DNA of 64,000 bases, from assembly GCF_040938485.1 (NCBI RefSeq), contig NW_027271245.1:62001-126000 (forward strand), given 5' to 3'. The DNA is from Diadema antillarum (lineage: Eukaryota). The notes beneath the pieces were generated by a model, which did no database searches, was not told where the DNA came from, and saw only the letters and a program-made list of their open reading frames with translations. This document shows, piece by piece, positions 2,951-57,133 of this stretch; position 1 is the first letter of the stretch, and each line of letters opens with the position of its first letter. The position numbers were made by a program, and so were the translations under genes.

Positions 2951-3246
2951 CAGCGATGTCGTATATAATGTGTATATGTAGAGTAAAAAGAAGATGGCGA
3001 AGTGCAGACTCTTTGGTCTCCGTCGTTCACAAGCACCAGCTACCGGCACAAAATCTACATTTCACAAGATGGCCATGGGGGAAAGCGAGTAGATACACTT
3101 GTACAACATGTACTGTAAAATTTGTTCAGCGTGCATAGCCAGCTGCAGTTCGCTAGCGCGGGTCACCGGTACCCGCGCACTCATAGCACCGTTCACCGAC
3201 GTACGCGGCTAGGCAGGTACACGCTCGGAGGAATCGGGGAATCCCC
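2951..3246 (-). promoter_or_regulatory. Putative kB site (GGGGAATCCCC, 3236-3246) plus non-coding first exon ending at CTG|GTAAGC (donor 2950); likely belongs to a paralogue left of the window
   Basis: Shares islands (CGTTTAAACA, ATGGGCTTACCAG, GGGGAATCCCCGCGTTGTTG) with 14353-14735, which lies upstream of P1. Confidence 0.55.
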
Positions 3247-4892
3247 GCGTTGTTGGTGGTGGCGTTGTTGCTGTTGTTGTTGTGTTGAATTGTTGCGTTA
3301 CTCAGTTGTGAATATTTACGCCTAGTAAAAACTCTCTTTAAAAAAATCAGTAGAAAAATATTTATACGGAAAAAAAATACATGTATCATTGCTTCATCAC
3401 TACTGCAATTTTTTTTACTAATTTTGGCCAGCCCGAAGCATATTTTGCTTTAATTTTGATGAAGTATCGGGCAAAGGAGAACAAAATATTACAGTATAAA
3501 TTAAGGCATGAAACTCGTCAGGAAGATATCAGTATTAAGCTCCCTCGAGAGGAATATTTGCGACAGTCAAGGAAGCTTCTTCCTGGGCCAGTTTTACCAA
3601 TCACGTCCCAGAAACTATTTTTTTTTTTTGTGATTTCTTTTATCTTGTCATGATACACTATTATTATTCATTAAACCATTTATATTCAGTATTACAGTTA
3701 AATAACGCAGAACGAAACAAAAACTATTTCATAAAGTTTTATTTGAATCCTTTAATGTTTATATACATATAGTAATTGCTGCAGATTTTTCCAGAGCCTC
3801 TTCACTCATAAATGTACAATTAATCACAAAACTGACAACACACTTCAAGTTACAGATCTTATTTCTCTCTCAAACTGGCATCATACAGTTCCATCCAGAC
3901 TTTCTCCAATAGAGGATGCACAATGAAATTAAGAGTTCAATTTAATTTAAGATTTATTTTGACTTTTCAACGGAACACAAATTAACAGGGCGTCCGAGTA
4001 AGATGACTAGCTACAGAAATCAACTGGCAAGTACTAGTTTTATTCTTCAATACAAACATGCCTGACATAACAATGAAAAGTAAGTTCATGTTTTCACTGA
4101 ACAGGACTATTGATCGCTGAATTTAAAAAAATGTAAGCCTCTTTTTCATGCAAAAGTGAAATTTTTGTAGGGAATATACTTCAAGAGAAATGGCAAAATG
4201 TCGAACGTTAGTCGTTTTATCGGCTTCTTAAGTAATTACTGATAACTTCTTCTCTTTATATTCTCTTTATTTTAATCCCTCACAAGTCAAATCTTATCTA
4301 AGACAAAAACTATTTGTTCAGTCCAAATACATACGAATTAGGCAAGGTTGACTGTAATTTCTTTGGTTCACAACACAGTAGTGTCTCACTTCTGTCATTT
4401 GAGTGGCATATCTTTGGATGTAACTTTTCTATGGTTCTCCTAAATGGTATTTCATTTACTGAATAGTAAATACTTTATTGCGGGCATAACAAAGTAATGA
4501 AAATGACTGTATCATAATCTACCTACAATGGCATCTAAACACACACACACACACACAGGAAAATATATCTCCTCATGTAGATAGGAACACGATGACTGAC
4601 TGAAATTTACAGCTCCCTTACATACTCTGCCCCCCCCCCCCCCGATAATTACTCATTCATTTTGAATATCTACAGTCACCAGCACTACCAAGGATGATTT
4701 CTACCTAATCTATTCAGAATACATCTTGAAGACAAGGCAAGTGCCATAATGTGTCTCGCCCATTCGCGTACAAGAAATTGTACGCGAATGGGATATGGGA
4801 TATAACAGATAATAAAAGAGATATAACAGATAAAAAGAGATATTAAAGAGTAAAAATTTATGGCAAAAAAGAAACGTGCCATAAAAACTTAA

Positions 4893-5341
4893 AGGACAAG
4901 TTCACCTTCATAGACATGTGGATTGAGTGAATGCAGCAATATTAGTAGAACACATCAGTGAAAATTTGGGGAAAATCAGACAATCCGTTCAAAAGTTATG
5001 AATTTTTAAAGATTCTGCGTAGTCACTGCTGGATGAGAAGACTACTACAGTGCATGATGTCATATGCGTACAACCATATAAAGAAAATAAAAAGAGAATT
5101 TCACAAAATTTGACTTTTTGAATGAAGTGCACATTTCTTCGACTTGTTACTGACATATATTAAGGGTAATATTATTCCCCCTGCCTTCTGAAAGAGAGAA
5201 GTCAAGTGTTCTTTTGTTATGCGAGAAAGTGAAAATATGTTGAATTTTCTTTATTCTTTCTTTGTACCGTTGTACTCATGTGACATCACAAGCTATAATA
5301 GTCTTCTCATCCAGCCTCGAGTGAGCAGAAACTTCAAAAAT
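4893..5341 (+). mobile_element. 3'-truncated Kolobok-like MITE (same family as 13690-14341)
   Basis: TTAA|AGGACAAGTTCACCTTCAT start, near-collinear with 13690-14230; inserted at the TTAA of an array-like unit; right end lost. Confidence 0.8.
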
Positions 5342-5344
5342 TAA

Positions 5345-9026: not shown

Positions 9027-9595
9027 CTACCACCAACGCTGCAGGCAATATCGGTAGAAACTGTACGGGGCTTTCCAAAATGGCACAATATACCAAGGAC
9101 TTGGGCTGCCTTCCACCTTTGTGCTGAGCATAGCTATTGCTCGAGCTCTGTCACCTCGGTACTCATGAAAGATCCATCTTACCCAAGGCAGAAGAGCCAT
9201 AGGCGGGAGAGATGTGCCACAAATGAAAATAACCCTCAACAGCAAATGCATGGTGCTGCTGCAAGACCTAGTCAAACCGCCTACCAAGCTGATGCAGAAA
9301 AAGACAGCTGCTGCAAAAAGATACCATGGCTGCAAGAAAGAGGTTTGCTTCAATGGGGTCACGTTGGTCACAAACGACACCAAGCTCTCCCAGTCCTCAG
9401 GATCCATCTCCCAGTTTGCACCAAGTCTTCCACACACCATGGCCAGAGACGAGCAAGCAAAGGTTGTAGGCTGCTGGTTCCTAAAGGTTGTCATCTGGCT
9501 CCTCTTCTTCTGACTGCGGCTGATACCTGACTGAGCATCCTCCTTGGAGAGAGGCCAAGAGAAGTCATGTCCAATCACTGCCACGTTTTGTTTGC
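9027..9595 (-). CDS. Paralogue P1 coding exon B (joined to 10807-11065; 275 aa): domain C-half plus hydrophobic tail
   Basis: Acceptor TGAAG|GC; GKQNVAVIGHDF...QQPTTF...CGRL homologous to the other five copies; phase matches exon A. Confidence 0.85.
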
Positions 9596-10806
9596 CTTCA
9601 CAAGGATTAGAAGGGAATGAAATTTTAAGAAAATTTGATATCAGTATGAAGAAGAGAATAACATATGGAACAGGGAAAGAAATCTAGTAATAATGATCAA
9701 GCTTCTGGCATTTCCCTATGACACAGACTGTTCCTATCAACCTGAAACTTTTGAGACATGTCTGACATATAAAAACATTCTGCGCAAAAAAAAAAAAAAA
9801 AAAAAACTTGATTCCAATCACTGTAATGTCATATTTTATGGAAAATTGTAAAGCGGCAAGGGGTAGATTACAATGTCATTGTTGGAAATCTACACAAATT
9901 AAATTACTACTGTAAAGTAATACCAGAGCAAGCAATATGTTCTGACCTGGATTGTTAGAATTCTTTATGTGGTACATCTACAAGGCATTGATAAACTGCT
10001 TCAGTCAATAAATGATATTCAGTAATTCCATGCTTTGCTACTGTATACAGTACTTGAGTAATTCAGAAGGGAAAAGTAGCACATTTCCCTGGTATATTTG
10101 CAAAAACTTTGATACAGCACAACAACTCAGGTTTATTTTTGGTTTGTAAGTTTTTATTCCTCAGTACATTAGATGTCCTTCAATGTGATAATGGGGAAAG
10201 AAAAACATGGATCAACTATATAGAGGAAATAGCTTGACTCCAGCTCTGTATGATCTGCTGAGTCACTGTATGAATTTTGGGCTTCGACAAGCAGACAAGC
10301 TGTCATAGGCACCTTCAAATGCATCAATCCAAATTGGTTTGTCATGTCCAACCCTCAAACTACACCAATCAAGCAGTTCCCAATGTACACACAGGTATTC
10401 CCTACAGAACACATACAAGCATGTAGCAACAATAATTAAAGCTCTATCCCTTCTATTTCCAGTTAATGCAAAACAAACACCAGATGCAGGACAATGAATA
10501 CTATATAAGCCATCATTTTTGCGAGGGTTTAATTTCTGTGAATCACTGCTGGACCGCAAATTTAACAACATGCAAAAATGTCGCCCATGCACTGGTTTAA
10601 CAGTGCACTTAAGACGACTTTGTGTCAATTTACGAAAACAGCATCTTGCGAAAAATGTCCATGACCTCCTAATTTGCAAAAATATCTGCACTCAAAAATT
10701 ACAGCTTATACAGTATTGTAATCCCTATGCATTGCTCACTTCAGCCTTTGGCTTAAAGCACATATTTTATTCATGGGCACAAACTTTGACTTATGCTACA
10801 ACTGAC

Positions 10807-11065
10807 CAATGGTATGTTCGGCATGTGGCAGGAACTTGTTGTAGAGGGCATCTGTGACATCTGTTATCGCAAAACGACGATTGTGGATGGAGTGACAGAG
10901 GATGATTCCATGCAGGCGCCCTTTTGGCAGTCGAAACTTGTCCACGTCATTGTACGGCAGCTCGACAAATACGGCTTCTACTTTAGGAATTCTGTTCAGT
11001 CTTGAGAGCAGCCCACTGACATTATCCTGCCTGGCAGATGAGCAGACCCCAATTATTGTTGACAT
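10807..11065 (-). CDS. Paralogue P1 coding exon A
   Basis: ATG at 11065 just after TGCAG|G; MSTIIGVCS...LPY...ILCHSIHNRRFAITDV; donor G|GTCAGT, phase 1. Confidence 0.85.
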
Positions 11066-11195
11066 CCTGCAGACGGTGACTGAAGCTTCTGTGGAAGATA
11101 AGTATCAATTTGTCACTTCATGTAAGAAATGAGACAAACTACCTGTGAGACACAGACTAACTAATCTCTGCCATTTCACAGTCAAAATCACAGTA

Positions 11196-26294: not shown

Positions 26295-26560
26295 ATGGCC
26301 GTGATAGGCGTGTGCGATTCAGGACAGGAATCCAGCATCAAAAGTTTGCTCCATGAACTCCGAGATCTTTCATCTAGGAGTGGTGGCGAAGTGAGATTCA
26401 TCCAGCTACCATACAGCGACCTGGACAGCTTTGAGCTGGCACGTGGCATAGTGGATGGAATCATTCTCTGCCACTCCATCCACAATCGCCGTTTTTCCAT
26501 CACCGATGTCGATGATGCCCTGTACGATAAGTTTCTGCCTCGCATGGCAGAGACGTTTTG
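26295..26560 (+). pseudogene. Paralogue P3 exon A (extra T before the donor; pseudogene or sequencing error)
   Basis: MAVIGVCDS...ILCHSIHNRRFSITDV; ends ACG TTT TG|GTGAGT versus ACT TTT G|GTGAGC in P6. Confidence 0.75.
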
Positions 26561-26892
26561 GTGAGTCGAATCAGTTTGTGTTTGATAATTCAGTCAATAT
26601 AAGAACTGTTGAGAAATGAAAACACAAACTGGGATCATAAGTGCATGATTGTCTTGATCATTACAGATCTATTACCGACAATGTTCTTAAATTTCTCACC
26701 AAAACAGTCGAGCTATACCAGTACAGGTACATGTTTATAAAAATTATGAAGGGAGTACAATAGCTAAAACTAGAGATACAGGATATTCAACTAATGTAAT
26801 CAATTTCATTCACAACACAATTCATTACGCTTAAACACGTCTGGATGTTTGCTTTTGTGTGTGTGTGTGTGGTGTGTGTGTGTGTGCGTGAG

Positions 26893-27668
26893 CAGAGCTA
26901 CCAAGTCTCACGCATTCTGCGTGAGACTAAAGCATTTAGGGGGCCGTCTCACGATCTCACGCATGGCACCCATTTTTCTCACGCATCGGGCGAAGTCCGC
27001 AACTTGGGCCTATAATAATGAGCATAGCTCAAAAGATTATAGTGATAGTTGCAAATGAAGGCATATTTCCCTTTTGTCTTTCGCAAAATAAGTAAAAAAA
27101 TGGTCACTTAAAGGGGATGGCTAGGAGGGGTCCTAAACCGATCAGTGGGAATCAGTGGGAATGCTGAGGGATGATTGTTCCAATCCTTGTGGGATTCATT
27201 TAAGAGTACATTATATATCTACTGTTGTGTGAAAATTATTTGCTTCAGAACGGTCTCATATTCAAGTAATGTGCAGATTAATACCCCATCACTGACCAGG
27301 CACACTAACCTGGAAACATTAAAACTGCACTTTACTTGATTATGAGACCATTCTGAAGCAAATAATTTTCACACAACAATAGATATATAATGTACTCTTA
27401 AATGAATCCCACAAGGATTGGAACAAATCATCCTCCAGCATTCCCACGGATTCCTACTGATCAGTTACTAGCCATCCTCTTTAAGTATGCACCTGATTGC
27501 ACCATTAAGAGCTCAAAATTGAAAAATCTCGACCGTGGGAGGCCACGGGGGGGGGGGGGGGGAAAGAAACCCCTCCCACACCCTCGCTCGCGCACACATT
27601 CGCATGCCGAGATGCCGAGTCATGAAAATCTCACTCATACAATTTTTTTTTTGAACTTGGCATCACTG
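26893..27668. mobile_element. DNA transposon-like insertion with 6-bp target-site duplication (CGTGAG)
   Basis: TIRs CAGAGCTACCAAGT / ACTTGGCATCACTG; CGTGAG at 26887-26892 and 27669-27674; single empty site in P4 at 29660-29665. Confidence 0.8.
27112..27480. mobile_element. Palindromic Kolobok-like MITE nested in 26893-27668
   Basis: TTAA|AGGGGATGGCTAG...CTAGCCATCCTCT|TTAA; arms complementary over ~165 bp. Confidence 0.85.
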
Positions 27669-27817
27669 CGTGAGAGTTTGAAAAATGTTTAAATACATGT
27701 ATTATAAAATGAATGGTTCATTTGAGATGTGTACGTAATCAACACGTTAACTTAGTACACCGTATTTCACGCAAAGTTCAGTGAAGTATAATCAATTTAC
27801 GTTACTTTGAATTGTAG

Positions 27818-28265
27818 GGAAGAACAACGTGGCTGTGATCGTGTATGATTTCCCATGGCACACACACAAAGGGGAGTGAAGAGAGAAGCTCCATCCATCG
27901 TGTTCGCATGGGACAGCTTCCGTATCAAACAGCCCGCCACCTTCGAGTGTAGCAAGCTGGCGATCACCTGTGGCAGGCTGGATTCCACGCTGGAGATTGA
28001 CATCGAGGACAGAGAGAACTTGGCGGTGTTTCTACAGAATGTCCAGCTCCGCACCCGCGAGCCCCGCAAACGCAAGTCTTTACTTGAAGTCTTGTTTCTT
28101 GGTGGAGTGGGAGCACTCTTTCTTGCAGCTTCTTATATCCTGTGCACACGCATCCTGTACAAGCTTAAGACCTTCTTTTTTGAAGAAATTGTTCCTCGTT
28201 GGAGCAGGCTCATCAACACACCGGTCTTAATTTGTAATATAAGTAGTCTGTTAGATTGCAGTTAA
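27818..28265 (+). pseudogene. Paralogue P3 exon B (two +1 insertions relative to P4)
   Basis: Acceptor TTGTAG|GG; NVAVIVYDFPW then frame breaks at AAAGGGGAGTGA and ATGGGACAGC; resumes FRIKQPATF...CGRLD...LLEVLFLGGVGALFLAASYILC. Confidence 0.75.
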
Positions 28266-28909
28266 GATTTCAGGTTGTTGTAGTTGAAAAAGTGCAAACT
28301 TCGCACCTTTGATTGGCAGCGTTTATTTTACTGCCCCATTATCTTTGAGCTCTATGATTATTAATATGTTTATTTCTTTCTTTTATTTGAAAGCCAGTTC
28401 ATTGATGTAAGTAATGTTCAAAGTTCAAAGTTCAAGTTTATTTGAACTATTTTATTGGTCCAGTTACTTTCTCATAAACTTTTTTTATTTTGTTTGGTAA
28501 GCTTGTCTTATTTTTTTTCACGGCGACATATGGAGAGGATCATGGGCCTGTCAAGTGTTATACGCAATAAACTCCCGCGCTACATTTTATCTTGTCGTAA
28601 GCTAGAATAAGTTTCTTTCAATATGCCAGAGCATTTTCAGCGCTCACCAATATAGGGTGCATCTCAATGATACCAGCGTGAGTGATACAACCGTTTAGAA
28701 ATAACTTAATGATAATAATAATTAATTCATTGAAAGCTAGGCTTACACTCTTTCGTTGCATATAATTTTTATGGTTAGACAATTACTTTATCTCGGGCAA
28801 GCATGCATCCAATCAAAACAACAATATACCTGTAGGCCTGCACATACGGGTACCGTACCGGAAGAATGCGCATGTTTCAATCCCAGCAAAGGACTAAAAA
28901 GAAAATGTA

Positions 28910-28954
<45 letters not shown>

Positions 28955-29044
28955 TATAAGGCCACAAGTTCTTTATCTCATGACAATAATTATATCTTCG
29001 GCCAACCAATTATTCTTTTCTTACAGTTTTTCACCATACAAGAT

Positions 29045-29336
29045 ATGGCCCTGGCAATACTCTTCGATACGAAGGCCGTGATAGGCGTGTGCGATTCAGG
29101 ACAGGAATCCAGCATCAAAAATTTGCTCCATGAACTCCGAGATCTTTCGTCTAGGAGTGGTGGCGAAGTGAGATTCATCCAGCTACCATACAGCGACCTG
29201 GACAGCTTTGAGCTGGCACGTGGCACAGTGGATGGAATTATTCTCTGTCACTCCATCCACAATCGCCGTTTCTCCATCACCGATGTCGATGATGCCCTGT
29301 ACGATAAGTTTCTGCCTTGCATGGCAGAGACTTATG
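29045..29336 (+). CDS. Paralogue P4 coding exon A
   Basis: MALAILFDTKAVIGVCDS...ILCHSIHNRRFSITDV; donor G|GTGAGT, phase 1. Confidence 0.8.
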
Positions 29337-29801
29337 GTGAGTCGAATTAGTTTGTGTTTTGATGATTCAGTCAATATAAGAACTGTGGAAAATGAAAACA
29401 CAAACTGGGATCATAAGTGCATGATTGTCTTGATCATAACAGATCTGTTACCGACAATGTTCTTGAATTTCTCACCAAACAGTCAAGCTATACCAGTTAT
29501 GAAAATTATGAAGGACGTACAATAGCTAAAACTAGAGATACAGGATATTCAACTAATGTAATCAATTTCATTCACAACACAATTCATTACGCTTAAACAC
29601 AGCTGGGTGGTTGTTGTTGTTGTTTTGTGTGTGTGTGTGTGTATTTGTGTGTGTGTGTGCGTGAGAGTTTGAAAAATGTAAAATATTATAAAATTAATGG
29701 TTCATATGAGATGTGTACGGAATCAACACGTTAACTTAGTACACCGTATTTCACGCAAAGTTCAGTGAAGTATAATCAATTTACGTTACTTTGAACTGTA
29801 G

Positions 29802-30286
29802 GGAAGAACAACGTGGCTGTGATCGTGTATGATTTCCCATGGCACACACACAGAGGAAGTGAAGAGAGGAGCTCCATCCATCATGTTCGCATGGCCACCT
29901 TCCGTATCAAACAGCCCACCACCTTCGAGTGTAGCAAGCTGGCGATCACCTGTGGCAGGCTGGATACCACGCTGGAGATTGACATCGAGGACAGAGAGAA
30001 CTTGGCCGTGTTTGTGCAGAATGTCCAGCCCCGCAGACGCCTGTCTTTACTTAAAGTCTTGTTAATTCTTGGTGGAGCTGGAGCGCTCATTCATGCAGCT
30101 CTGAAGTTGAAGACCTTTGTTGAAAAAATTGTTCCTGCTTTGAGCAGGCTCATCAACACAGCGGGCTTACTTTATAATACAAGTAGTCTGTTAGATCAGG
30201 GAGGAGCACCTCCCAGGTTAGATAACAATTGGATTTCATTTTTCTATCCATTCCCAGACATGTCCATCTTTAGGCCACCATGGTAA
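29802..30286 (+). CDS. Paralogue P4 coding exon B (258 aa in total), hydrophobic helix in tail
   Basis: Acceptor CTGTAG|GG; GKNNVAVIVYDFPW...KQPTTF...CGRLD...LSLLKVLLILGGAGALIHAAL. Confidence 0.85.
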
Positions 30287-31905
30287 TAAAGAGATGACCC
30301 AACTTTTTTCTTCTTTTCATGTTGTTGTAGTTGAAAAAGTGCACACTTCGCACCATTGATTGGCAGCGTTTATCTTATGGTCCCATTTTCTTTGAGCTGT
30401 ATGATTATGAATATGTTTATTTCTTTTTTTTTAAATTTGAAAGCCATTTCATTAATGTAAGTAAGGTTCAAAGTTCAACGTTCAAATTTATCTGAGCTTT
30501 TTTTTATTGGTCCAGTTACTTTCTCATGAACTTTTTAACTTTCCTTCTCAGCTGATTGTTTCATTGGCGTAGATTTTCCCCCGCACAATAGTTTCAATGT
30601 TTTTTTGCCATCTGTAAAATGGCAGAACCGCCGCTGGCAGTTCTCCTCTCCCCATACATGCGTCGTGTTGCAAAGTAGCTTTATATTACGCAAGGACGCA
30701 ACCTACACAAAGTAAAATGGCGCCCCAGAGGATCATTTCATCAAGTATAGCTCTCTGCGTCATGATTCGAGTGGATGCAATCGTTAATGACCCAGAACCG
30801 ACCGTGCAAACTCGGACGACTCGAGGTCGATTTTCATACGCAAATGTGCGCATGCTCTGAACAGTGTTTCTTCCTCCGAACGTCCGCGTCGCGAAAATCT
30901 AAAGCTCCCTCAGGACGTTGCATCTCTCATCTCAGTTTCAATACTTTCTTGATTACGAATACGAGATCATACATAAAGTCTTATATGATTATGTTACTCT
31001 TGGTTAGGGCCTATCATCTTCAATTAACAATGATAGAATGACTCCACGATAAAGGAACAATGAATCGAGTTTTATTGATTAATAATCTTATTTCTCCATT
31101 CAAACTGTTATACAGTTAACATTTGCCATGTGCTAAGGACGCGTTTCTCATTGTTGAATGAGATAATTCCGTGATTGATAGACTGAGGACTCATTAGGTG
31201 TCCAATTGAATAAATGTTAAACAATAATACACCCATGCTTGATTATGTAACCTTGAAACGTACATTCTATTCTTCATAGTGGTGAAAACATGCAATACCC
31301 TCAGTACTATGCGCACACACATTTACACACAAACCTATACATAAAAGAGAGTAATTTTAACTGGAGCACCGTATAGAGGATGATGTACTCAAGTTCAAGT
31401 TCAAGTTAATTTGTTTCATTTCCAACAAAATAATTAGGAATACAATGAAATGTTCGCATATACAGATAATGTCACAAAATCGGTACAACAATATGATGCA
31501 CATAGTAATATGTAATAATGACATAGCTATAGAAATAAATATTATATCATTATGGTAAAGTCAGAAACAAAATTGCTGGAAATGAAGGGGACTGCTAAAC
31601 AGCAGAGCTTGTAGTATGCAGGCCCCTTATAAAAAAAAATCAAATTGCAAAAAAAAAAGAGATCTCTTGAGCCGTATACTTTTCAATAAAAATGTCAACA
31701 ATACATCCGTCTGAATTCAAATTTTCTTCTCTTCTCTTTGTTATCTACGTGATTTTGTAACCTTCTCTACCTTTTCCTTCCTCCTTTCTTGTTCATCCAT
31801 CGCCTCCCAACGACCTCCGAAGGCTTGATACCTGATCCTCACCCTATTCTTCCTTACATTTGTCCCTGTCTCCTATATTCACCCGTCTCCACTAGTGCGA
31901 CTTAA

Positions 31906-33352: not shown

Positions 33353-34599
33353 AGGTTGAGCTTTATACGTCATTATGAGTAGAAATGAAGTCAAATGGGA
33401 ATTTACCAAACAGTGAAATTTAAGGAAAGTCGTACAATCCATTTAGAAGTTCTGACTTTGAAATTCTAAATCCATAATGCTATATGCCGTCAACACCGGA
33501 AGAGAAGGCTACGCCCACTGGTATGTCACGGTGATAAGAGTACAATGGCTCCTTTGATTGCCTGTCGAAAAATACATTGTTTTTAAATTATTTTGCTTTT
33601 ATTTCACTGTTTTAATGGCTCGGTTCCACAGTATAGCATTGACTTGATCAGCCAATACATTAACTCTAGACATTTACGTTCCCAGAATTCTGACCCCTTG
33701 TCATCATAAAATCTAAATATTTTACGCGAAGCGGTGGGAACAAACTTTCGCCCACGCCGCCGGCTCTCCTTCATGGATCTCCGTCCCTATTTTTTTTTTT
33801 TTATTCTGTTGAAATGTTTAAAATAATCTCAAGAAGTATTTGTTTGATATGGCTTACAATAATTGATTATTATCATTTTCATTATGTCCTGTACTGCTAT
33901 TATCTCTCGTTTTCTATCTCTGATGTACTCGTATGTAGTTCGTATATTTTGCACATGATTACGCCGAGAGCATTTATTCATTAGAGTGATTTGGCACCTT
34001 AAATTGCATTTATTATTGTTATTATTACAATAAAAAGCAAGGAATTAAACAGAATACCACATTTTCATTTACAGGCGCAATAAAAGAGCATGTTCATTGC
34101 CTCCATCCTTATGGTGGTGTAGCTGTAGAATATCCCCATTGACACACATGTATGTAAGAAACAGGTTGACGAAATGTGCACCCTTCATATCATTTTTAAA
34201 AAGACGGGCGTTGTATAGTCTTGTCATCCGGCTATGACGTCACAAGGGTTTATCTAATCGGGCTTTAAAGAATTACACAATTTGAATGTATTGTATTATA
34301 GAAATATCTTTGTGCTTGCTTCACCAATATGTTCTGATATTTTGTAGCATTCATTTCATCAACCTTGTTCGTGGGGGGGGGGGGGGAGGGGGAATCTCCC
34401 TGTATAAGTTCGTTGTTCAAACACATATGATTTTGTTTCATTTGCACATCTCGTAGAGCACGAAGATATAGAACCTAAAATGCGCACTGCAATTTAAGAT
34501 TGATTAAAAGCATTCTATAAAGTGCACCATGTAATGTTGCTATCGACAGCAGAAGTAGTTGTAGACGCTTTAGTTACAATTTGTATGTTGTAGTGTAGT

Positions 34600-37929: not shown

Positions 37930-38129
37930 GGGGATTCCCTCTGCAAATCAAACAGTCATGATAACCTATATACCTGTTTACAGATTACAGGATGTTCTGT
38001 CACATGGCTATACGACCACGGAGATGACGTATTGCACGTATCGACCCTGCAATGGTCATTCGACATTTTGACGTGTTTTACGTTGTGGAAGGTTTGCCAT
38101 GTTGAATGATCGATGTACAAGATGCTTTG
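37930..38129 (+). promoter_or_regulatory. P5 putative kB site (GGGGATTCCC, 37930-37939) and non-coding first exon (donor TTG|GTAAGT at 38130)
   Basis: Reverse complement of GGGAATCCCC; same site-donor geometry as the other copies; assignment to P5 (3.7 kb away) is inferred. Confidence 0.5.
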
Positions 38130-38274
38130 GTAAGTAACGACTACTCTAATTTTTGAACTTTTATATCCGTTAAATTGATGTCGAGCTTAAACTCACAACC
38201 GCATTTATAAAGTGAGGCGGGGGGGGGGGGGGCTGAGGAAACTGAAGGAAGAACAATTACAGTGGTCTGATCAG

Positions 38275-40720: not shown

Positions 40721-40721
<1 letters not shown>

Positions 40722-41898: not shown

Positions 41899-42154
41899 AT
41901 GGTGATTGTCGGGGTTTGCTCGTCCTCGGGGCGGGAGAGCATTCGGGCCTTCCAATCACAGCTACGATCCGAACAAGAAGTGGTGGTCAAGTTCATAGAG
42001 CTGCCTTACAACAACCTCGACGCATATCGCCTCAAACGAGACTGCGCGGACAAAGTCATCCTGTGTCACTCCATCCACAATCGGAGATTCGCCATCACAG
42101 ATGTAGTGGACTCTCTCTACGACAAATTCTTGAATCACGCTAAAGGCACCTTTG
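41899..42154 (+). CDS. Paralogue P5 coding exon A
   Basis: MVIVGVCSS...LPYNNLD...VILCHSIHNRRFAITDV; donor G|GTATGA, phase 1. Confidence 0.85.
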
Positions 42155-42189
42155 GTATGACGTTATACTCTTCTCGGGCGATTTTAAAT

Positions 42190-42395
42190 TTTTCCGAAGG
42201 TTCGTTAATCAGAAAATTGAATAATGTACCTTGATGTTCATTCATCCGAAAATGAAACGAAGGAAAGGTGGGTACAAGCGAGTGTTTGGAATAACGAATT
42301 CACCTTATTTCATTTTCGAATTAAAGAACCTTTCGAAATAACGACCCTTATATTTCATTTTCGGCTTAACGAACCTTCGGAATCACGAACTGTAA
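42190..42395. mobile_element. Small inverted-repeat MITE in the P5 intron
   Basis: TTCCGAAGGTTCGTTAA ... TTAACGAACCTTCGGAA. Confidence 0.6.
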
Positions 42396-42741
42396 CTCCC
42401 TTCTCAAGATCTTAGGCTATAGACAAACGAGTTTCAAAGATAAATAAATACAACTACGTATGATTACATTTTGTGTGAAAGGATGCACAAGCAATATTTG
42501 GACCGCACTTCCACGATGACACCATGTGTACGGTGCAATCGTCAAGAACAAAAATACGAAGAATTGTGAGTGAGAAACATCTTGAAGAAATCATTAATTT
42601 GACAAGAAAATGCATATATAAATTCTCTTCCAACAAACGACAAAATGATTATTCCTCTTCTCTTTTTCAAGAACAGAAAACGCAAGCATAGCATTTTCAC
42701 TCAAATATTGAAACCTTTTTCTTCATGTTCTCACATTATAG

Positions 42742-43064
42742 GAAAAGAAAATGTAGCCGTGATAGCCCATGATTTCCCCCAACCAGAGAGCGGGGATGGC
42801 GAAGCACGCAAACGACTGACGAAAGTGCGAATGGCCAGCTTCCACATCAAGCAACCGACCACTTTCCAATGCACCGACCTGGCGTTGACATGTGGCAAGC
42901 TGGATACAGTGGTAGATATTGACAATGGCGATTGGCTTCAAGTCAAGAGATTTTTGACACGGAGTCGACAGACTGGCGGAGATTTGTCCTCCTCTTCAAC
43001 CGTCATCATCCAAATTTATAAAGATAACATTGCTTTGGCGTCATACCCACCAGACAATTTATGA
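42742..43064 (+). CDS. Paralogue P5 coding exon B (192 aa in total), short non-hydrophobic tail
   Basis: Acceptor TATAG|GA; GKENVAVIAHDFP...KQPTTF...CGKLD. Confidence 0.85.
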
Positions 43065-51526: not shown

Positions 51527-51571
<45 letters not shown>

Positions 51572-52049
51572 ATCATATAACCTCATTCTCAACTATTTCT
51601 TGTTATATGTAACAACATGCGCCCTTTCAACAAAATGCGGACGACAGTATTGATGATTTTATCAATAATAAGTAAGCTTGAATTGCGAGATTTTTGTACA
51701 TATTATTACAGCAAATCCCCATGTACGACAACATTCTACAGTAGTCATGGTAATAATTATAATCCTTTGTCTTCTGTTTTCAAGGAAACATTTCAATATG
51801 AACGTAGAATATGATTTTCATATAACAGAAATTTAGGAATCACGTCTACAGACAGAACACTATAGGATCATAAAACGTCACAGAAATTACTCTTTTCCGG
51901 CCTTGTGTATAGTGACTTTCTAGTGTAAAAGGGTAAATGCTTTGATTAGGCAAAAATTACGTTTTGTTCTATGATTATGACATATAATATATAACATATA
52001 ATGAATAATATATAACATATAACATAATATGATATATAATATACAATAT

Positions 52050-55000
52050 TGCCCACTGCCCACTGCCCAGTGGGCAGTGGGCAGGTCCTTCTGGTCCTGT
52101 ACGGGTAGTGAGACGTCCCCGCCCTCCACGAGTCTCCCGCTGCCTTGCGGGCAGTTTTTTGGTTAATCAAAGGCTAGGGAGTAAACCTTATCCAAATCCG
52201 GAGCGGAGCCCCTAAGGCGGTTAGGTGTTGCAGCTTCATCATCTCTCCGGCAGCTCCTACAGTCCAGTTGTGGCTAGGATGTGTCGCCCTGCGTCCCTCC
52301 TGGCTAGATCAGCTGGACCGAGAGGGGGGTCCTGGGCTTGGGCAACCCAAGGCCTCCACAGTTCTTCTCGCCCAGGATTCAGTGACTCCACCCTCCATCT
52401 CTTCTCTTCTTCTCCCAAGTCCTGAGGCGATGGGCGAGTGGCGACGGTAGCAGGTGCAAGATGGCGCTGGGAGCTTCTAGCCATGGACCTACACTCAGGC
52501 GGTCAGGGCAAGGATGGTCGTTCTACAACCTACCGGGGCAAGGGCATAGTTCGGCAGCCACTCTGACGACGGAGCAGCCCTTTTCAGGGACAGCACTGCT
52601 CCCCCCTCATGGGGAAGGGTCTAGAAAAGGTGACCTAAAAAAAGCTTGCCTCATCTCCATCCTGTCAGCATACCGCAGCTGACTGGACATCTACCACGCG
52701 GTCGAAATACAAGAGAAACACGAAAGACGAACTCAAAATCATCCCGCCGGAAAAGCACCTTATGTGTTGGAGCCTGGAACATCAGGACACTCATGGATAA
52801 CCAAAACTGTGACAGACCAGAACGTCGAACAGCACTTGTAGGTCGAGAACTGCTGAGATACAGCATCGATATTGCTGCCCTCAGCGAGACACGCCTTGCA
52901 GACACTGGGGAGATCACCGAGGCTGGAGCTGGATACACTTTCTTCTGGTCGGGAAAGGCACTAAATGAACGCAGGGAGGCAGGAGTTGGTTTTGCCATTC
53001 GCACCACCCTCGTCAAGAACCTGGGGTCCCTCCCAAGGGGTATCAGCGACCGCCTGATGGTGATAAGAATCCCTCTCCATGGCAAGACGCACTTGTCACT
53101 CATCAGTGTGTACGCCCCCACCATGACCTATACTCTGGAGGAGAAAGAGCTGTTCTATCAGAACCTCTCCAAAGTGCTGCGGTCAGTTCCTAAAGACGAC
53201 AAGCTGCTGATACTAGGGGACTTCAATGCCCGGGTGGGTAGAGATGCCCAGTCTTGGCCAGATGTCATTGGGCCACATGGCACTGGCCATGAGAACACCA
53301 ACGGCCAACTGCTACTCACCCTCTGTGCTGAACATGGACTCACCATCACCAATACCCTGTTCCAACTGCCAGACATCCACAAAACTACCTGGATGCACCC
53401 AAGATCCAAGCACTGGCACTTGATTGATTATGTGATCACCAGGCGCCGAGACATCCAGGATGTTCGCATCACAAGAGCAATGAGGGGAGCTGACTGCTGG
53501 ACAGACCACCTGCTGCTGAGGTGCAAACTGTCCTTTTCCATTGTCAGCAGGCATAGACGTCAGAAATCTGACGTTAAAAAGAAAATGGATGTCCAGAAGC
53601 TAAATGAACCAAACACAAAAGAAGCCCTCATCACCAACCTTGCAAACCAGCTTGAACATCTACCAGCAGAGGAAGACTACGAGAAGGCCTGGGCCAACTT
53701 CCGGGATGTGGTGTATGACTCTGCCAGTCTGACTCTTGGATATATGACAAGGAAACACCAAGACTGGTTCGACAACAACAACAAGGAGATCACCACCCTC
53801 CTCCAGGAGAAGAAAGAAGCCTTTACAGCCTGGCTCAATGACAAAGACTCCCAAGCGAAGCGTGACCGCCTCAAGAACATCAGAGGAAAGGTGCAGACCG
53901 AGCTGCGACAGATGAAAGACAAGTGGTGGGAGAACAAGGCTGCAGAACTACAGCAGTACGCAGACGAGCACAACTCAAAGAAATTCTTTGCCAGCCTGAA
54001 GGATGTGTATGGCTCCACGCCAAATGCAATGGCACCTGTGCGCTCTGCCAATGGAACCCTGCTTACTGAGAAAAGCAACATCATACAGCGTTGGAGCGAA
54101 CACTTCAGCCAGCTACTAAACAGACCTTCTCAGATCGACCAGCAGGCCATTCAAGATATGCCACAGCGCCCAGTCCTGACCTTCCTTGATGACCCCCCAA
54201 TGTTGGCAGAAACCCTGAAGGCAATCAAGCAACTACATGCGGGGAAAGCACCTGGTCCTGACGGAATACCCCCAGAGATCTTCAGAGAGGGAGGTGCAGC
54301 CATTGCCATCAAGCTGACCGAGCTGATACAGCAATTCTGGGAAGAAGGATCGGTGCCGCAGGACTTCAAGGATGCCAACATTGTGCATCTGTACAAGAAC
54401 AAAGGGGACAGAGCTTCATGTGACAACCACCGGGGCATATCACTATTGAGCATCGCAGGAAAGATTATGGCCCGTGTTGTTCTGAACCGCATCTCACACC
54501 ATCTGCTGGACGACGTGGTCTCTGAGAGCCAGTGTGGATTTAGGAGCAACAGGGGGACAATAGACATGATCTTCGCATTACGGCAGCTACAAGAGAAGTG
54601 CCGAGAACAAAACCAGAACTTATACATCCTCTTCGTAGATCTGACGAAGGCTTTTGACACTGTCAGCCGTGAGGGTCTGTGGGCTATCTTGACCAAGCTG
54701 GGCTGCCCTCCTAAGTTTGTCAGGATCATCCAGTCCTTTCATGATGGCATGATGGCTCGCATTGTGGCAAACGGAGATATCTCTGACCCATTCCCAGTCT
54801 CCAATGGTGTAAAGCAAGGCTGTGTGATGGCTCCTACACTCTTCAGCCTCATGTTTGCTACCATGCTCTTCTGTGCCCTCTCCAAGTGTGATGCTGGTGT
54901 CAGTATTCGGTACAGATGTGATGGCCGATTCTTTGACCTTAGACGTCTGAAGGCAAAGACCAAAGTCCTGAAGGCCCTTGTGAGAGACTTCCTGTTTGCA

Positions 55001-55956
55001 GACGATTGTGCGCTTGCAGCATTGAATGAACCAGACCTCTCAGAACTTGCCACTTGTTTTGCAGAAGCAGCAAAAGCCTTTGGACTGACCATCAGCCTGC
55101 AAAAAACAGAAGTGATGCTCCAGCCTGCACCTGGCCTGTCACCTCCTGAGCCTCAGATCGAGATCGAGGGCACAAAACTGAACAACGTGGAGAGCTTCAC
55201 ATACCTGGGAAGCTGCCTGTCTTCAAACTGCAGCATGGACAAGGAAGTCTCCAAGAGGCTCGCAAAAGCAGGAACTTCGTTTGGCAGACTTTGGACACGT
55301 GTGTGGGGTGAACGAGGCATCAGGCTTTCTACCAAGCTGGCAGTCTACAAGGCAGTCGTCGTCACATCCCTGCTCTATGGCTGTGAGACATGGACGCTGT
55401 ATAGGAGGCAAAACCGTGCACTTGACCAGTTCCACCTCCGCTGCCTGCGACGAATCATGGGAATTTCCTGGCAGGATAGAGTCTCAAACACTGAGGTGCT
55501 TCGCAGAGCCAAAATGTCTGGGATCGAGGCCCTCATCATGAAGGCCCAGCTCCGATGGGTCGGACATGTTGTCCGAATGGATGATACTCGTCTACCAAAG
55601 ATGATCTTCTTCTCCGAGCTGGCTTCTGGAGCAAGGAGCATTGGAAGGCCCCTGAAGCGGTACAAAGACAGTCTGAAAACTTCCCTTGTTGCCTGTGGCA
55701 TCTCAGCCCGTGACTGGCAGTCGCTTGCCTCTGACCGCACCGTCTGGCGCCCAGCTGTCCAAAGGGGTGCAAGACTGTTTGAGGAGAAGCGCCTCAGGAG
55801 CTTGGACCAGAAGCGAAAAGCCCGCAAAGAGAGGATCACGGACCCTACTTCTGCTGTGGCATGCCCAACATGTGGCCGCGTCTGTGCGTCCGCCTTTGGG
55901 CTCCGCTCCCACCTCCGGCGTCACTGACGTCATTGTCGAACCCGACAGACTTCCAT
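52050..55956 (+). mobile_element. Full-length RTE-clade non-LTR retrotransposon
   Basis: 10-bp target-site duplication TATACAATAT (52040-52049, 55957-55966); GC-rich 5' leader; single long ORF; short 3' UTR. Confidence 0.9.
52646..55927 (+). CDS. RTE polyprotein: AP endonuclease, reverse transcriptase and C-terminal Cys/His finger
   Basis: Uninterrupted 1093 codons: GAWNIRTL, ALSETR, LGDFNARVG, TDH, QCGFR, FVDLTKAFD, GVKQGC, LFADD, YLG, CPTC...HLRRH. The listed start is TTG, not ATG. Confidence 0.95.
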   Translation: MPHLHPVSIPQLTGHLPRGRNTRETRKTNSKSSRRKSTLCVGAWNIRTLMDNQNCDRPERRTALVGRELLRYSIDIAALSETRLADTGEITEAGAGYTFFWSGKALNERREAGVGFAIRTTLVKNLGSLPRGISDRLMVIRIPLHGKTHLSLISVYAPTMTYTLEEKELFYQNLSKVLRSVPKDDKLLILGDFNARVGRDAQSWPDVIGPHGTGHENTNGQLLLTLCAEHGLTITNTLFQLPDIHKTTWMHPRSKHWHLIDYVITRRRDIQDVRITRAMRGADCWTDHLLLRCKLSFSIVSRHRRQKSDVKKKMDVQKLNEPNTKEALITNLANQLEHLPAEEDYEKAWANFRDVVYDSASLTLGYMTRKHQDWFDNNNKEITTLLQEKKEAFTAWLNDKDSQAKRDRLKNIRGKVQTELRQMKDKWWENKAAELQQYADEHNSKKFFASLKDVYGSTPNAMAPVRSANGTLLTEKSNIIQRWSEHFSQLLNRPSQIDQQAIQDMPQRPVLTFLDDPPMLAETLKAIKQLHAGKAPGPDGIPPEIFREGGAAIAIKLTELIQQFWEEGSVPQDFKDANIVHLYKNKGDRASCDNHRGISLLSIAGKIMARVVLNRISHHLLDDVVSESQCGFRSNRGTIDMIFALRQLQEKCREQNQNLYILFVDLTKAFDTVSREGLWAILTKLGCPPKFVRIIQSFHDGMMARIVANGDISDPFPVSNGVKQGCVMAPTLFSLMFATMLFCALSKCDAGVSIRYRCDGRFFDLRRLKAKTKVLKALVRDFLFADDCALAALNEPDLSELATCFAEAAKAFGLTISLQKTEVMLQPAPGLSPPEPQIEIEGTKLNNVESFTYLGSCLSSNCSMDKEVSKRLAKAGTSFGRLWTRVWGERGIRLSTKLAVYKAVVVTSLLYGCETWTLYRRQNRALDQFHLRCLRRIMGISWQDRVSNTEVLRRAKMSGIEALIMKAQLRWVGHVVRMDDTRLPKMIFFSELASGARSIGRPLKRYKDSLKTSLVACGISARDWQSLASDRTVWRPAVQRGARLFEEKRLRSLDQKRKARKERITDPTSAVACPTCGRVCASAFGLRSHLRRH

Positions 55957-56676
55957 TATACAATATATCTGTATGCAATTATATTTGTAAGATCACAACT
56001 ACTGATCTACAGTATATATTTCAACAAACATGTCGGAAAAGGGAAACAAACCAAATACGTCTCTACGGAATCGCTGATGGAGACAAATCATGAAAATCCT
56101 TCAAATCAAATCTTTATCTATAGATGCTATAATAACCTCGCTTCATTCAAGATTATGTTTGTACATATACATGTATATAAACTTTTTTGAGGATGGTTCG
56201 ATGTGCTGCACTTGCACTGCTTTTTCATTTTAAGTTTTTTTTTTTTCATGCATGCATGGGTGTTCATTTCTTTATCATTATTATTATTTTTTTGTTGGGG
56301 GGGGGGGAGGGAAGTCTTTTTAAGAGCCCTCCACCTCCCCCCCCCCCCCCCCCACCCCCCACTCCCCTGGCATTGTCCTACATGTTGGATGAATCATAAA
56401 TCATAATTCATGGCTTTAAAAAGCAAATGTACAGTGCTGAGTAATCACACTCATCGAATAGGATTCTGGAGGGGATTTCAATATCTATTTCAATTACAGT
56501 GTATGTTTAATGTGTACTAGTATTTATTCAAAAAGCAAAAAAGCAAAAAGGTTAAGTTGAACCGCTGAACAGAGCCAGCGACAGAATGCCTGGTCATGTG
56601 CCTTTCCCATAGACACTTTCGCCACTGTTGAGACCCTTTGCCAGTGCATACTAGTACTATACATGTATGTGGTGGT

Positions 56677-57133
56677 GGAGAATCCCCGTCGTGCGGCAGG
56701 AAATTCCTTGCCGACATACGAAACTATCACATGCTATTTACGTGCAGTTCAGCGGTCGATACATGCTTCATATCTCATGAATGTGACTTTCAAAAATTAT
56801 GTCATTGTCGCCCCGTATAGAAAGGCAAACATTTTCAGTAGCTGCAGAGGGGTAAAGTACATGGATCAAACGACGCTACTTGTGTTGAATGCAGAGTGAA
56901 TGCAGAGCTTCAGAAGCCAGAGCAAAAGCCAGGCCAGGGTCTCGGCAGGGAGTCATATACAAAACTCGTCATCATCTCCGACTTCGTCAGTTGTCTTTGA
57001 CGTGCATTACATTTGATATCGTATTTCGTCGAAATCGTGGATCGCTGTCCCTTAATCTCGCCAGCCAGCTACCAGAGACCTAGCAGCAGTTACAAGATAC
57101 AGTGTGCAAACTCTCTTCAGAAGAGCAGTCAAG
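56677..57133 (+). promoter_or_regulatory. P6 putative kB sites (GGAGAATCCCC 56677-56687; GGAAATTCC 56699-56707) and non-coding first exon (donor AAG|GTAAAT at 57134)
   Basis: Minus-strand GGGATTCTCC fits GGGRNWYYCC; acceptor TAACAG at 57931 precedes the P6 ATG. Confidence 0.55.

What the first reader, a model, noticed from the sequence alone, without database searches (positions are those of the whole stretch)
2951..57133. NF-kB-type site followed by a non-coding-exon donor ahead of almost every paralogue
Seen: GGGGAATCCCC at 3236, 14713 and 24009; GGGGAATTCCCC at 25409; GGGGATTCCC at 37930; GGAGAATCCCC (+GGAAATTCC) at 56677. Each is followed, in the direction of the adjacent gene, by a GTAAG/GTAAA donor ~190-450 bp away (2950, 14379, 23819, 25730, 38130, 57134). 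The flanks are otherwise unalignable, except for islands shared by 3236 and 14713. A GC-rich 11-mer occurring three times in AT-rich DNA is very unlikely by chance. Established: GGGRNWYYCC is the Rel/NF-kB consensus, and G4...C4 palindromes are p50-type sites. Inference: the cluster is a coordinately NF-kB-inducible unit whose cis-element outlived promoter divergence.
Basis: partly seen in the sequence, partly recalled or inferred. Interest (0 to 1): 0.8.

Follow-up and report, generated by a model that had tools for sequence, protein, structure and literature searches.

The report
Conserved kB palindrome in urchin promoters
An 11-base NF-kB-type palindrome lies just upstream of the first exon of almost every gene in a sea-urchin gene cluster, and the same 11 bases precede related genes in distantly related sea urchins, so it is almost certainly a working control element, probably bound by NF-kB, although its binding and induction could not be tested.

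Summary
The window is from the sea urchin Diadema antillarum. It holds seven tandem paralogues of an unnamed gene family. An eighth paralogue starts just left of the window.

GGGGAATCCCC-type sites lie at all six listed places (11 hits against 0.24 expected). Each faces a paralogue and is followed by a GGTAAR donor 190-447 nt downstream. The flanks do not align, and the sites are not in repeats.

New evidence supports selection on the site:
- The exact 11-mer lies 196-1293 nt upstream of the coding start of six homologues in Strongylocentrotus purpuratus and Lytechinus variegatus (6 found, 0.036 expected in 166 kb).
- It is the only invariant block in those promoter alignments.
- No other 6- to 8-mer is shared by the 15 promoters.
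- All sites keep a full GGGRNWYYCC match.

The 11-mer equals the mammalian MHC-kB site that p50 homodimers prefer. One survey found only p50/p105-type NF-kB in echinoderms.

Gene D is the exception. It is a truncated duplicate that begins 16 nt before C's donor, so it probably uses C's promoter.

Binding by NF-kB and immune induction remain inferred, because no RNA run was listed.

Verdict: a real, conserved kB-type promoter element. It is a new member of a known kind.

The parts
3236..3246 (-). kB-type palindrome of gene S0, GGGGATTCCCC in the gene's direction. The gene's coding exons lie left of the window (protein P0014; its ATG is 545 nt before window position 1).
   Evidence: Conserved in the D. 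setosum orthologue at L004 5651.
2946..2950 (-). Putative donor of the first exon of S0 (CTG|GTAAGCCCAT), 286 nt downstream of the site.
   Evidence: Gene A shares this island.
14713..14723 (-). kB-type palindrome of gene A.
   Evidence: It sits in a 25-nt island 96% identical to S0, inside a promoter that otherwise does not align.
14375..14379 (-). Putative donor of the first exon of gene A (CTG|GTAAGCCCAT).
9354..11056 (-). Gene A coding exons (11056-10811 and 9584-9354).
   Evidence: An acceptor lies before the ATG.
24009..24019 (-). kB-type palindrome of gene B.
23815..23819 (-). Putative donor of the first exon of gene B (ACG|GTAAGT), 190 nt downstream of the site.
19419..22544 (-). Gene B coding exons (22544-22311 and 19637-19419).
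25409..25420 (+). 12-nt palindrome GGGGAATTCCCC of gene C, 1.4 kb from and divergent to gene B's site.
25730..25734 (+). Putative donor of the first exon of gene C (TTG|GTAAGC).
26295..28262 (+). Gene C coding exons (protein P0002). The second coding exon carries two 1-nt insertions relative to D, which break the frame.
28481..30536 (+). Gene D (protein P0001), a tandem copy of C. The copy begins 16 nt before C's donor (25714 against 25730), so D keeps the donor and intron but has no kB site or promoter.
   Evidence: The sister-contig model P0003 joins C-type and D-type exons.
37930..37940 (+). kB-type site of gene E, GGGGATTCCCT (10 of 11 bases; a full GGGRNWYYCC match).
38130..38134 (+). Putative donor of the first exon of gene E (TTG|GTAAGT). 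The 3.8-kb intron holds a MITE and a LINE reverse-transcriptase fragment.
41899..43061 (+). Gene E coding exons (protein P0022).
56677..56687 (+). kB-type site of gene F, GGAGAATCCCC. The D. setosum orthologue has the perfect GGGGAATCCCC.
56699..56707 (+). Second, 9-nt kB-like site GGAAATTCC, 12 nt after the first. It is also kept in D. setosum.
   Evidence: It is the reverse complement of the IL-8 kB site quoted in PMC9991059.
57134..57138 (+). Putative donor of the first exon of gene F (AAG|GTAAAT).
57960..59420 (+). Gene F coding exons (protein P0005).
34389..34399 (.). Orphan kB-like site GGGGAATCTCC beside a G14 run. No family gene is nearby, so it is probably chance or a relic.

Best explanation
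Each transcription unit of this tandem sea-urchin gene cluster has a promoter-proximal kB-type palindrome (GGGGAWTCCCC or a one-step variant). The palindrome lies about 140-500 nt upstream of the donor of a short first exon that is mostly or wholly non-coding. Selection has kept the element across the family for the whole history of modern sea urchins, while every other promoter base has turned over. The most likely reader is a dimer of the echinoderm p50/p105-type NF-kB. Its 5+1+5 half-site geometry fits this 11-mer exactly. On that reading, the paralogues are switched together when NF-kB enters the nucleus, presumably in coelomocytes during an immune or stress response. Shown here: the sites, their position and orientation relative to the genes, their non-random occurrence, and their deep conservation as the only shared promoter element. 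Inferred: which protein binds, and that the output is inducible activation.
For: Enrichment in the window: 11 hits against 0.24 expected, and 27 against 3.0 for GGGRNWYYCC. Six of seven places face a paralogue. The sites are not part of any repeat. The D. setosum orthologues of F and S0 keep the site despite kb-scale insertions nearby. In 165.6 kb around 11 camarodont homologues the exact 11-mer occurs 6 times against 0.036 expected (P 3e-12), always 196-1293 nt upstream of a family coding start. Two more genes carry one-mismatch versions. In a three-way S. purpuratus / L. variegatus promoter alignment the palindrome is the only contiguous invariant block. No other 6- to 8-mer is shared by the 15 promoters above shuffled controls. 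Copies S0 and A align from 45 nt before the ATG to the 3' flank (78% in the intron). Upstream they align only in a 25-nt island around the site. All 16 sites listed keep a complete GGGRNWYYCC match, and mismatches to the 11-mer fall at outer positions. CpG observed/expected is 0.82-1.2 around the sites against 0.66 for the window, which is promoter-like. Donors cluster 130-340 nt downstream. Acceptors precede every ATG. S. purpuratus gene models start their coding sequence inside the first exon, 196-491 nt after the site. GGGGATTCCCC is the MHC-kB site, and 11-bp 5+1+5 sites are preferred by p50 and p52 homodimers (PMC9991059). S. purpuratus has a p105-type NF-kB, and a survey found no c-Rel in echinoderms (PMC11432056). 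Two S. purpuratus family members are expressed in coelomocytes (PMC13043383 Table1).
Against: There are no binding data and no transcript data for Diadema: no RNA run was listed, so transcription start sites are not mapped. Three of 11 camarodont homologues lack a convincing site: the L009 gene, the first gene of L011, and L012, which has only a one-mismatch site 5.6 kb upstream. One of them (LOC100888558) is nevertheless well expressed in coelomocytes. In the UVB data set the site-bearing LOC100890563 shows no evident induction. Mammalian p50 homodimers lack an activation domain and can repress, so the direction of the effect is open. Other proteins, such as HIVEP/Schnurri zinc fingers, bind the same sequence in mammals (my own knowledge, not tested here). 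In D. antillarum gene F the site carries a G-to-A change relative to D. setosum.
Confidence: 0.6

Rival explanations
1. The palindrome is a real, selected promoter element, but a protein other than a Rel-homology factor reads it. Candidates are a HIVEP/Schnurri-type zinc finger or an echinoid G-string/C-string binding protein. On this reading it sets tissue-specific or basal expression rather than NF-kB induction.
For: All the conservation evidence fits any sequence-specific binder equally well. No binding or induction data exist. There is no evident induction in the one coelomocyte data set found.
Against: Every variant keeps a full GGGRNWYYCC match, and two promoters add a second, differently shaped kB-type site: GGAAATTCC in gene F and GGGAATTCCC in the first gene of locus L010. 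That pattern is expected for Rel dimers, not for a factor that needs the exact 11-mer. The sequence is identical to a textbook p50 site.
Confidence: 0.25
2. NF-kB binds the element, but the element acts as a constitutive or repressive p50-homodimer site. It would hold the genes off or at a set level, so the cluster is not an inducible immune unit.
For: The G4..C4 11-mer is the homodimer-type site. Mammalian p50 and p52 homodimers need cofactors such as Bcl3 to activate (PMC9991059). Family members are already expressed in unstimulated coelomocytes.
Against: Invertebrate p105/Relish-type proteins carry their own activating capacity (my own knowledge). In echinoderms, which one survey reports lack c-Rel and RelA, the p50-type factor is likely to serve as the activator.
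Confidence: 0.15
3. The sites are inherited leftovers of gene duplication, or were spread by a mobile element or gene conversion, and have no function.
For: S0 and A are recent duplicates and share the site with 22 identical bases. TE fragments are abundant around the promoters.
Against: The flanks are not repeated anywhere in the window. The intron and 3' flank of S0 and A have drifted to 71-78% identity, and the rest of the promoter is unalignable. The identical 11-mer persists in genera whose promoters are fully diverged, at 6 found against 0.036 expected.
Confidence: 0.03

Closest known systems
MHC class I enhancer kB site (MHC-kB, GGGGATTCCCC), the classic p50-homodimer site of mammals
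   Same: It has the identical 11-nt sequence, the 5+1+5 palindromic geometry with an A/T centre, and a promoter-proximal position (PMC9991059).
   Different: Here it is in an echinoderm, ahead of an unrelated and unnamed gene family. No protein binding or induction has been shown.
Insect antimicrobial-peptide gene clusters with promoter kB sites read by Relish, Dif or Dorsal (my own knowledge)
   Same: Tandem paralogues each carry a promoter-proximal kB element that survives while the rest of the promoter diverges. This gives coordinate induction.
   Different: The insect sites are asymmetric (GGGGATTYYT type), and their inducibility has been shown by experiment. Here the products are membrane-anchored intracellular-looking proteins, not secreted peptides.
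Interferon-inducible GTPase clusters of vertebrates (IRG, GBP, GIMAP)
   Same: They are clustered, fast-duplicating paralogues that share an inducible promoter element. The best structural neighbour of the sea-urchin domain is human IRGQ (Z 10.0, rmsd 3.9 A over 149 residues), and Irgb6 also appears at Z 8.9.
   Different: The family consensus has no P-loop. Sequence identity is only 8-9%, and Z 10 is only slightly above the background of 7-8. The shared element is kB, not ISRE/GAS.
185/333 (SpTransformer) immune gene cluster of S. purpuratus
   Same: It is an echinoid tandem family expressed in coelomocytes (one search shows both in the same count table).
   Different: The proteins are unrelated, and the promoter elements of 185/333 were not compared here.

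Membership tests
Rel/NF-kB response element (kB site) | The sequence fits GGGRNWYYCC. | tested here: met
   All six window sites and all 10 sites listed in other loci contain a full match.
Rel/NF-kB response element (kB site) | Dimer geometry: two G-rich half-sites around a central A/T. The 11-bp 5+1+5 form is typical of p50 and p52 homodimers. | tested here: met
   GGGGA-W-TCCCC is identical to the MHC-kB site quoted in PMC9991059.
Rel/NF-kB response element (kB site) | It lies in the promoter or enhancer of the regulated gene, upstream of the transcription start. | tested here: inconclusive
   The site is always on the 5' side, 138-545 nt before the first-exon donor. S. purpuratus gene models start their coding sequence 196-491 nt downstream. 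Start sites themselves are not mapped, because no RNA run was listed.
Rel/NF-kB response element (kB site) | It is conserved beyond neutral expectation in orthologues and paralogues. | tested here: met
   The exact 11-mer occurs 6 times against 0.036 expected in camarodont loci. It is the only invariant block, and the only alignable island between the S0 and A promoters.
Rel/NF-kB response element (kB site) | It is bound by a Rel-homology-domain protein of the same organism. | not testable with these tools
   The literature reports a p105-type NF-kB in S. purpuratus (NP_999819.1; PMC11432056). There are no binding data.
Rel/NF-kB response element (kB site) | It confers stimulus-dependent transcription. 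| not testable with these tools
   No RNA run was listed. The only data set found is UVB-treated coelomocytes, with no evident induction of LOC100890563.
5' non-coding first exon with a downstream intron | A donor with the consensus G|GTRAG downstream of the promoter, and a polypyrimidine-AG acceptor shortly before the ATG. | tested here: met
   All six donors read G|GTAAG or G|GTAAA. All six first coding exons have a pyrimidine tract and AG 20-50 nt before the ATG. Donor position is non-random.
5' non-coding first exon with a downstream intron | Transcripts join the first exon to the first coding exon. | tested here: inconclusive
   No reads were available for Diadema. S. purpuratus models for four family genes begin their coding sequence in that first exon. 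These are the minus-strand gene of L005, the first gene of L008, and both genes of L011.
Motif carried by a dispersed transposable element | The flanks of the sites are repeated and alignable among copies. | tested here: not met
   Self-comparison of the window and of the promoter regions found no shared flanks apart from the S0/A island. Camarodont flanks are unalignable.
P-loop GTPases (IRG/TRAFAC class), for the encoded proteins | A Walker A / G1 motif GxxxxGK[ST] after strand 1. | tested here: not met
   The consensus of 48 family members has no conserved G1 motif. There is no Pfam hit. The similarity is at fold level only.

The most novel reading that the evidence does not exclude
The kB palindrome marks an echinoid-wide NF-kB regulon whose main output is an undescribed family of membrane-anchored proteins with a G-domain-like fold but no P-loop. 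These would be an invertebrate deuterostome counterpart of the vertebrate inducible immunity-GTPase clusters, wired to NF-kB rather than to interferon signalling. The wiring would have been kept since before diadematoid and camarodont sea urchins separated.
Probability: 0.25. Interest if true: 0.75.

Novelty: new member of a known kind. Interest (0 to 1): 0.55.

Why it matters
I found no paper describing direct NF-kB target genes or their cis-elements in echinoderms. Here a single 11-base element is the only thing conserved in the promoters of a fast-evolving, lineage-specific gene family, across sea urchins that separated on the order of 200 million years ago (my estimate from general knowledge). 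That gives three things:
- a precise element that can be mutated in reporter and gel-shift experiments;
- a ready set of candidate NF-kB targets for studies of coelomocyte or larval immunity;
- a search term (GGGGAWTCCCC within about 1 kb of first exons) for defining the wider regulon in sea-urchin genomes.

It also flags an unannotated protein family, with more distant relatives in frogs, as a likely immune or stress effector.

Tried and rejected
- **RNA evidence.** The look-up of sequencing runs listed no RNA run for 22200-28100. Read laying could therefore not be used, and start sites and induction stayed untested.
- **Family scans.** Pfam found nothing for the exons or for eight longer relatives. 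A first Pfam call exceeded the size limit. A profile search of PDB sequences gave nothing.
- **Structure prediction.** Single-sequence AlphaFold was useless (pLDDT 47). The 48-sequence alignment then gave pLDDT 94.7.
- **Fold searches.** Foldseek against PDB gave only weak flavodoxin, WrbA, CENP-M and GTPase matches. The ESM Atlas gave flavodoxin-like and unnamed chordate clusters.
- **Feature search.** The ESM Atlas feature search of the first coding exon gave only weak, unnamed clusters.
- **First word search.** Using the second coding exon alone, it found only the window's own proteins.
- **Literature.** No paper mentions the S. purpuratus LOC identifiers in its main text. No paper was found on echinoderm kB cis-elements.
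- **Second shared motif.** A k-mer search for one found none. An apparent 'AGRCTAAGCG' motif upstream of some sites did not survive that test.
- **Simulation.** A simulation-based null timed out. An analytic first-order Markov expectation replaced it.
- **TE origin.** I considered and rejected a TE origin for the site at 14713. The LINE-derived segment shared with 34768-34822 lies 113 nt beyond the site and is not collinear with it.
- **Earlier findings.** The look-ups gave only one unchecked title.

Full report
**What the window is.** The window is record positions 62001-126000 of contig JBFRCO010000357.1 of the Diadema antillarum assembly GCA_040938485.1. D. antillarum is the long-spined sea urchin.

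tblastn with the two conserved coding exons finds six paralogues inside the window:

| Gene | Strand | First coding exon | Second coding exon |
|---|---|---|---|
| A | minus | 11056-10811 | 9584-9354 |
| B | minus | 22544-22311 | 19637-19419 |
| C | plus | 26301-26558 | 27829-28052 |
| D | plus | 29078-29335 | 29813-30037 |
| E | plus | 41905-42153 | 42753-42932 |
| F | plus | 57966-58223 | 58812-59021 and beyond |

A seventh gene, here called S0 (protein P0014), has its ATG 545 nt left of window position 1, on the minus strand. So the site at 3236 belongs to a gene whose coding part is outside the window. Its 5' intron is about 3.5 kb, much like the 3.3-kb one of gene A.

**The observation.**
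- With up to one mismatch, GGGGAATCCCC gives 11 strand-hits at seven places, against 0.24 expected from dinucleotide shuffles. None of 100 shuffles reached 11.
- GGGRNWYYCC gives 27 hits against 3.0 expected.
- The seventh place (34389, GGGGAATCTCC) adjoins a run of 14 G and has no family gene near it. I treat it as an orphan.

Read in the direction of the adjacent gene, the sites are:
- GGGGATTCCCC for S0, A and B;
- GGGGAATTCCCC for C;
- GGGGATTCCCT for E;
- GGAGAATCCCC followed 12 nt later by GGAAATTCC for F.

Both orientations of the central A/T occur, as expected for a palindrome read by a homodimer.

**The donors and the first exon.** The six donors are at the stated coordinates, and all have G at position -1. 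A GTRAG pentamer by itself is weak evidence: the null median distance to the next one is 420 nt. Position does carry information, though. The first GTRAG lies 130-340 nt downstream of the site in 5 of 6 window promoters (P 0.004). Across species it does so in 11 of the 14 promoters tested (P 2e-5), and a fifteenth, the second gene of locus L011, is also in range.

Three further points support a short first exon:
- Every first coding exon has a pyrimidine tract and AG 20-50 nt before its ATG.
- S0 and A share the donor island (CTGGTAAGCCCAT plus a 16-nt intronic motif) while the rest of the intron does not align.
- In S. purpuratus, four family gene models begin their coding sequence inside that first exon. 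In one the first exon ends ATG|GTAAGT, with the ATG 196 nt after the site. In another the ATG is 491 nt after the site and the donor 545 nt after it. In a third the ATG is 261 nt after the site and the donor 315 nt after it.

CpG observed/expected is 0.82-1.2 within 200 nt of the sites, against 0.66 for the window. That is what unmethylated promoters look like. Transcription start sites themselves remain unmapped, because no RNA run was listed for this stretch.

**Not a repeat, not a duplication leftover.** Self-comparison of the window, and an all-against-all comparison of the promoter regions, show no shared flanks. The exception is a 22-25-nt island around the S0 and A sites.

That exception is itself informative. 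S0 and A align from 45 nt before the ATG through the first coding exon (93%), the intron between the coding exons (78%), the second coding exon (87%) and the 3' flank (71%). Upstream of that, across intron 1, the first exon and the promoter, only the island around the palindrome aligns, at 96%.

A LINE-derived segment near the site at 14713 (14836-14890, similar to 34768-34822) lies 113 nt beyond the site and is not collinear with it.

**The exception, gene D.** D is a tandem copy of C. The duplicated block starts at 25714, 16 nt before C's donor at 25730, and continues to the end of the gene. D therefore inherited the donor and intron but no promoter and no kB site. Conversely, C has the promoter, but its second coding exon carries two 1-nt insertions relative to D that break the frame. 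A gene model on a sister contig (P0003) joins C-type and D-type exons into one product. The simplest reading is that D is transcribed from C's promoter. That explains 'almost every paralogue'.

**Related species.** This is the decisive new evidence.

In D. setosum the orthologue of F has a perfect GGGGAATCCCC and the same GGAAATTCC. It keeps both despite a 0.44-kb insertion just downstream and a roughly 4-kb insertion just upstream. The orthologue of S0 also keeps its site. Diadema species are too close for this alone to prove constraint, since background identity is 80-94%.

I therefore fetched loci for more distant family members (35-50% protein identity) from S. purpuratus and L. variegatus. 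Distances below run from the site to the family coding start.

| Locus | Species | Site | Distance upstream |
|---|---|---|---|
| L005, plus-strand gene | S. purpuratus | exact 11-mer | 581 nt |
| L005, minus-strand gene | S. purpuratus | exact 11-mer | 196 nt |
| L008, first gene | S. purpuratus | exact 11-mer | 491 nt |
| L008, second gene | S. purpuratus | exact 11-mer | 630 nt |
| L011, second gene | S. purpuratus | exact 11-mer | 261 nt |
| L006 | L. variegatus | exact 11-mer | 1293 nt |
| L010, first gene | S. purpuratus | one mismatch, plus GGGAATTCCC 27 nt upstream of it | 784 nt |
| L010, second gene | S. purpuratus | one mismatch | 1595 nt |
| L009 | L. variegatus | none | - |
| L011, first gene | S. 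purpuratus | none convincing | - |
| L012 | L. variegatus | one mismatch | 5.6 kb |

In the 165,564 nt examined, a first-order Markov model expects 0.036 exact copies, and six are seen (Poisson P 3e-12). For up to one mismatch, 1.14 are expected and 10 are seen.

In a three-way alignment of two S. purpuratus promoters and one L. variegatus promoter, the palindrome is the only contiguous invariant block. A k-mer census of 15 promoters finds no other 6-, 7- or 8-mer shared more often than in shuffled sequences. A more distant D. antillarum paralogue on another contig (L007) has GGGGATTCCCA 4.6 kb upstream of its ATG, with a GTGAGT donor 276 nt downstream. That is the same layout as S0 and A.

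**Which factor.** The 11-mer is identical to the mammalian MHC-kB site. According to PMC9991059, p50 and p52 use 5-bp half-sites and their homodimers prefer 11-bp 5+1+5 sites, whereas RelA and c-Rel homodimers prefer 9-bp sites such as GGAATTTCC. The reverse complement of that 9-mer is the second site in promoter F.

All 16 sites I listed keep a full GGGRNWYYCC match. Departures from the 11-mer fall at its outermost bases, or leave another register intact. That pattern fits Rel dimers better than a factor needing the whole 11-mer.

S. purpuratus has a p105-type NF-kB (NP_999819.1). A 2024 survey found p50/p105-type but no c-Rel or RelA proteins in echinoderms (PMC11432056). This fits a homodimer-type site being the preferred form in this lineage. 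None of this is a binding experiment, so a non-Rel reader of the same sequence remains possible.

**What the genes encode.** The family has no Pfam domain and no named member. A full HMMER scan found 163 cluster representatives. The members whose sources were looked up are echinoid or frog proteins.

With a 48-sequence alignment, AlphaFold gives a confident model (pLDDT 94.7) of a three-layer alpha/beta domain spanning both coding exons. Foldseek finds only weak flavodoxin-like and GTPase-like neighbours. The exhaustive aligner ranks human IRGQ first (Z 10.0), followed by EngA, other GTPases and Irgb6 (Z 8.9). Z 10 is only a little above the usual background, and the family has no P-loop. I therefore call it a G-domain-like or flavodoxin-like fold of unknown activity. 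The residues C-H-S, N-R and H-D are nearly invariant. A long helix (residues 180-229 in the low-confidence single-sequence model) follows; I read its hydrophobic start as a possible membrane anchor.

Two S. purpuratus members (LOC100890563 and LOC100888558) are expressed in coelomocytes. Raw counts range from tens to hundreds per library in PMC13043383 Table1. That study used UVB, not microbes, and shows no evident induction of the site-bearing gene.

**Verdict.** The element is a real, selected promoter element of kB type. That NF-kB reads it is the best-supported mechanism (about 0.6). That it makes the cluster immune-inducible is plausible but untested. This is a new member of a known kind of element, attached to an undescribed gene family. 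An unchecked first-reader note (s1-215093) reports a conserved NF-kB site in duplicated promoters elsewhere in this genome. I could not examine it.

Noticed in passing
window 52646-55927 (+): An uninterrupted 1093-aa LINE ORF with endonuclease and reverse-transcriptase domains lies about 750 nt upstream of promoter F. At the orthologous place in D. setosum the flanks (window 51550-52049 and 55957-56439) are only 88 nt apart (L003 3057-3145), so the insertion appears specific to D. antillarum and recent.
   Followed up: partly
window 5343-6839: A 157-nt tandem repeat of 9.7 copies at 86% identity, with higher-order periods of 300 and 457 nt, lies between the promoter of S0 and the 3' end of gene A.
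   Followed up: partly
window 26295-30536: C has a promoter but a frame-broken second coding exon. D has intact exons but no promoter. The sister-contig gene model P0003 joins C-type and D-type exons into one two-domain product.
   Followed up: partly
window 34950-35060 (+): The annotated last exon of gene D (the final 37 residues of P0001) lies 4.7 kb downstream. It sits inside a LINE-derived segment, antisense to a reverse-transcriptase C-terminal ORF (34788-35066, minus strand). It is either an exonised TE fragment or a gene-model artefact.
   Followed up: no
window 13895-14224, 5001-5342, 27106-27486, 62213-62596, 11194-11388, 38274-38425: Several MITE-like inverted-repeat elements are present, some in the 5' introns of A and E. 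None overlaps a kB site.
   Followed up: partly
window 47828-48375 and 49242-49789: Two 548-nt direct repeats are 99.6% identical and 0.87 kb apart. They could be an LTR-like pair or a very recent duplication.
   Followed up: no
alignment A1 / model m5b756a157479 (proteins of the cluster): The family domain folds confidently (pLDDT 94.7) as a G-domain-like or flavodoxin-like alpha/beta sandwich. It has nearly invariant C-H-S, N-R, H-D and Q-P..F residues, which look more like an active or binding site than a dead scaffold. Some frog relatives are fused to a P2RX7 C-terminal domain.
   Followed up: partly
L003 7988-8430 and 3599-7676 (D. setosum): The D. setosum promoter of the F orthologue has a 0.44-kb repeat-rich insertion between the kB pair and the first exon, and about 4 kb inserted just upstream. 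The kB pair is nevertheless intact.
   Followed up: partly
L007 12818 and L002 21686: Further GGGAATTCCC(C) sites lie downstream of the P0015 and P0014 genes in D. antillarum. They may be promoters of neighbouring, unexamined genes.
   Followed up: no
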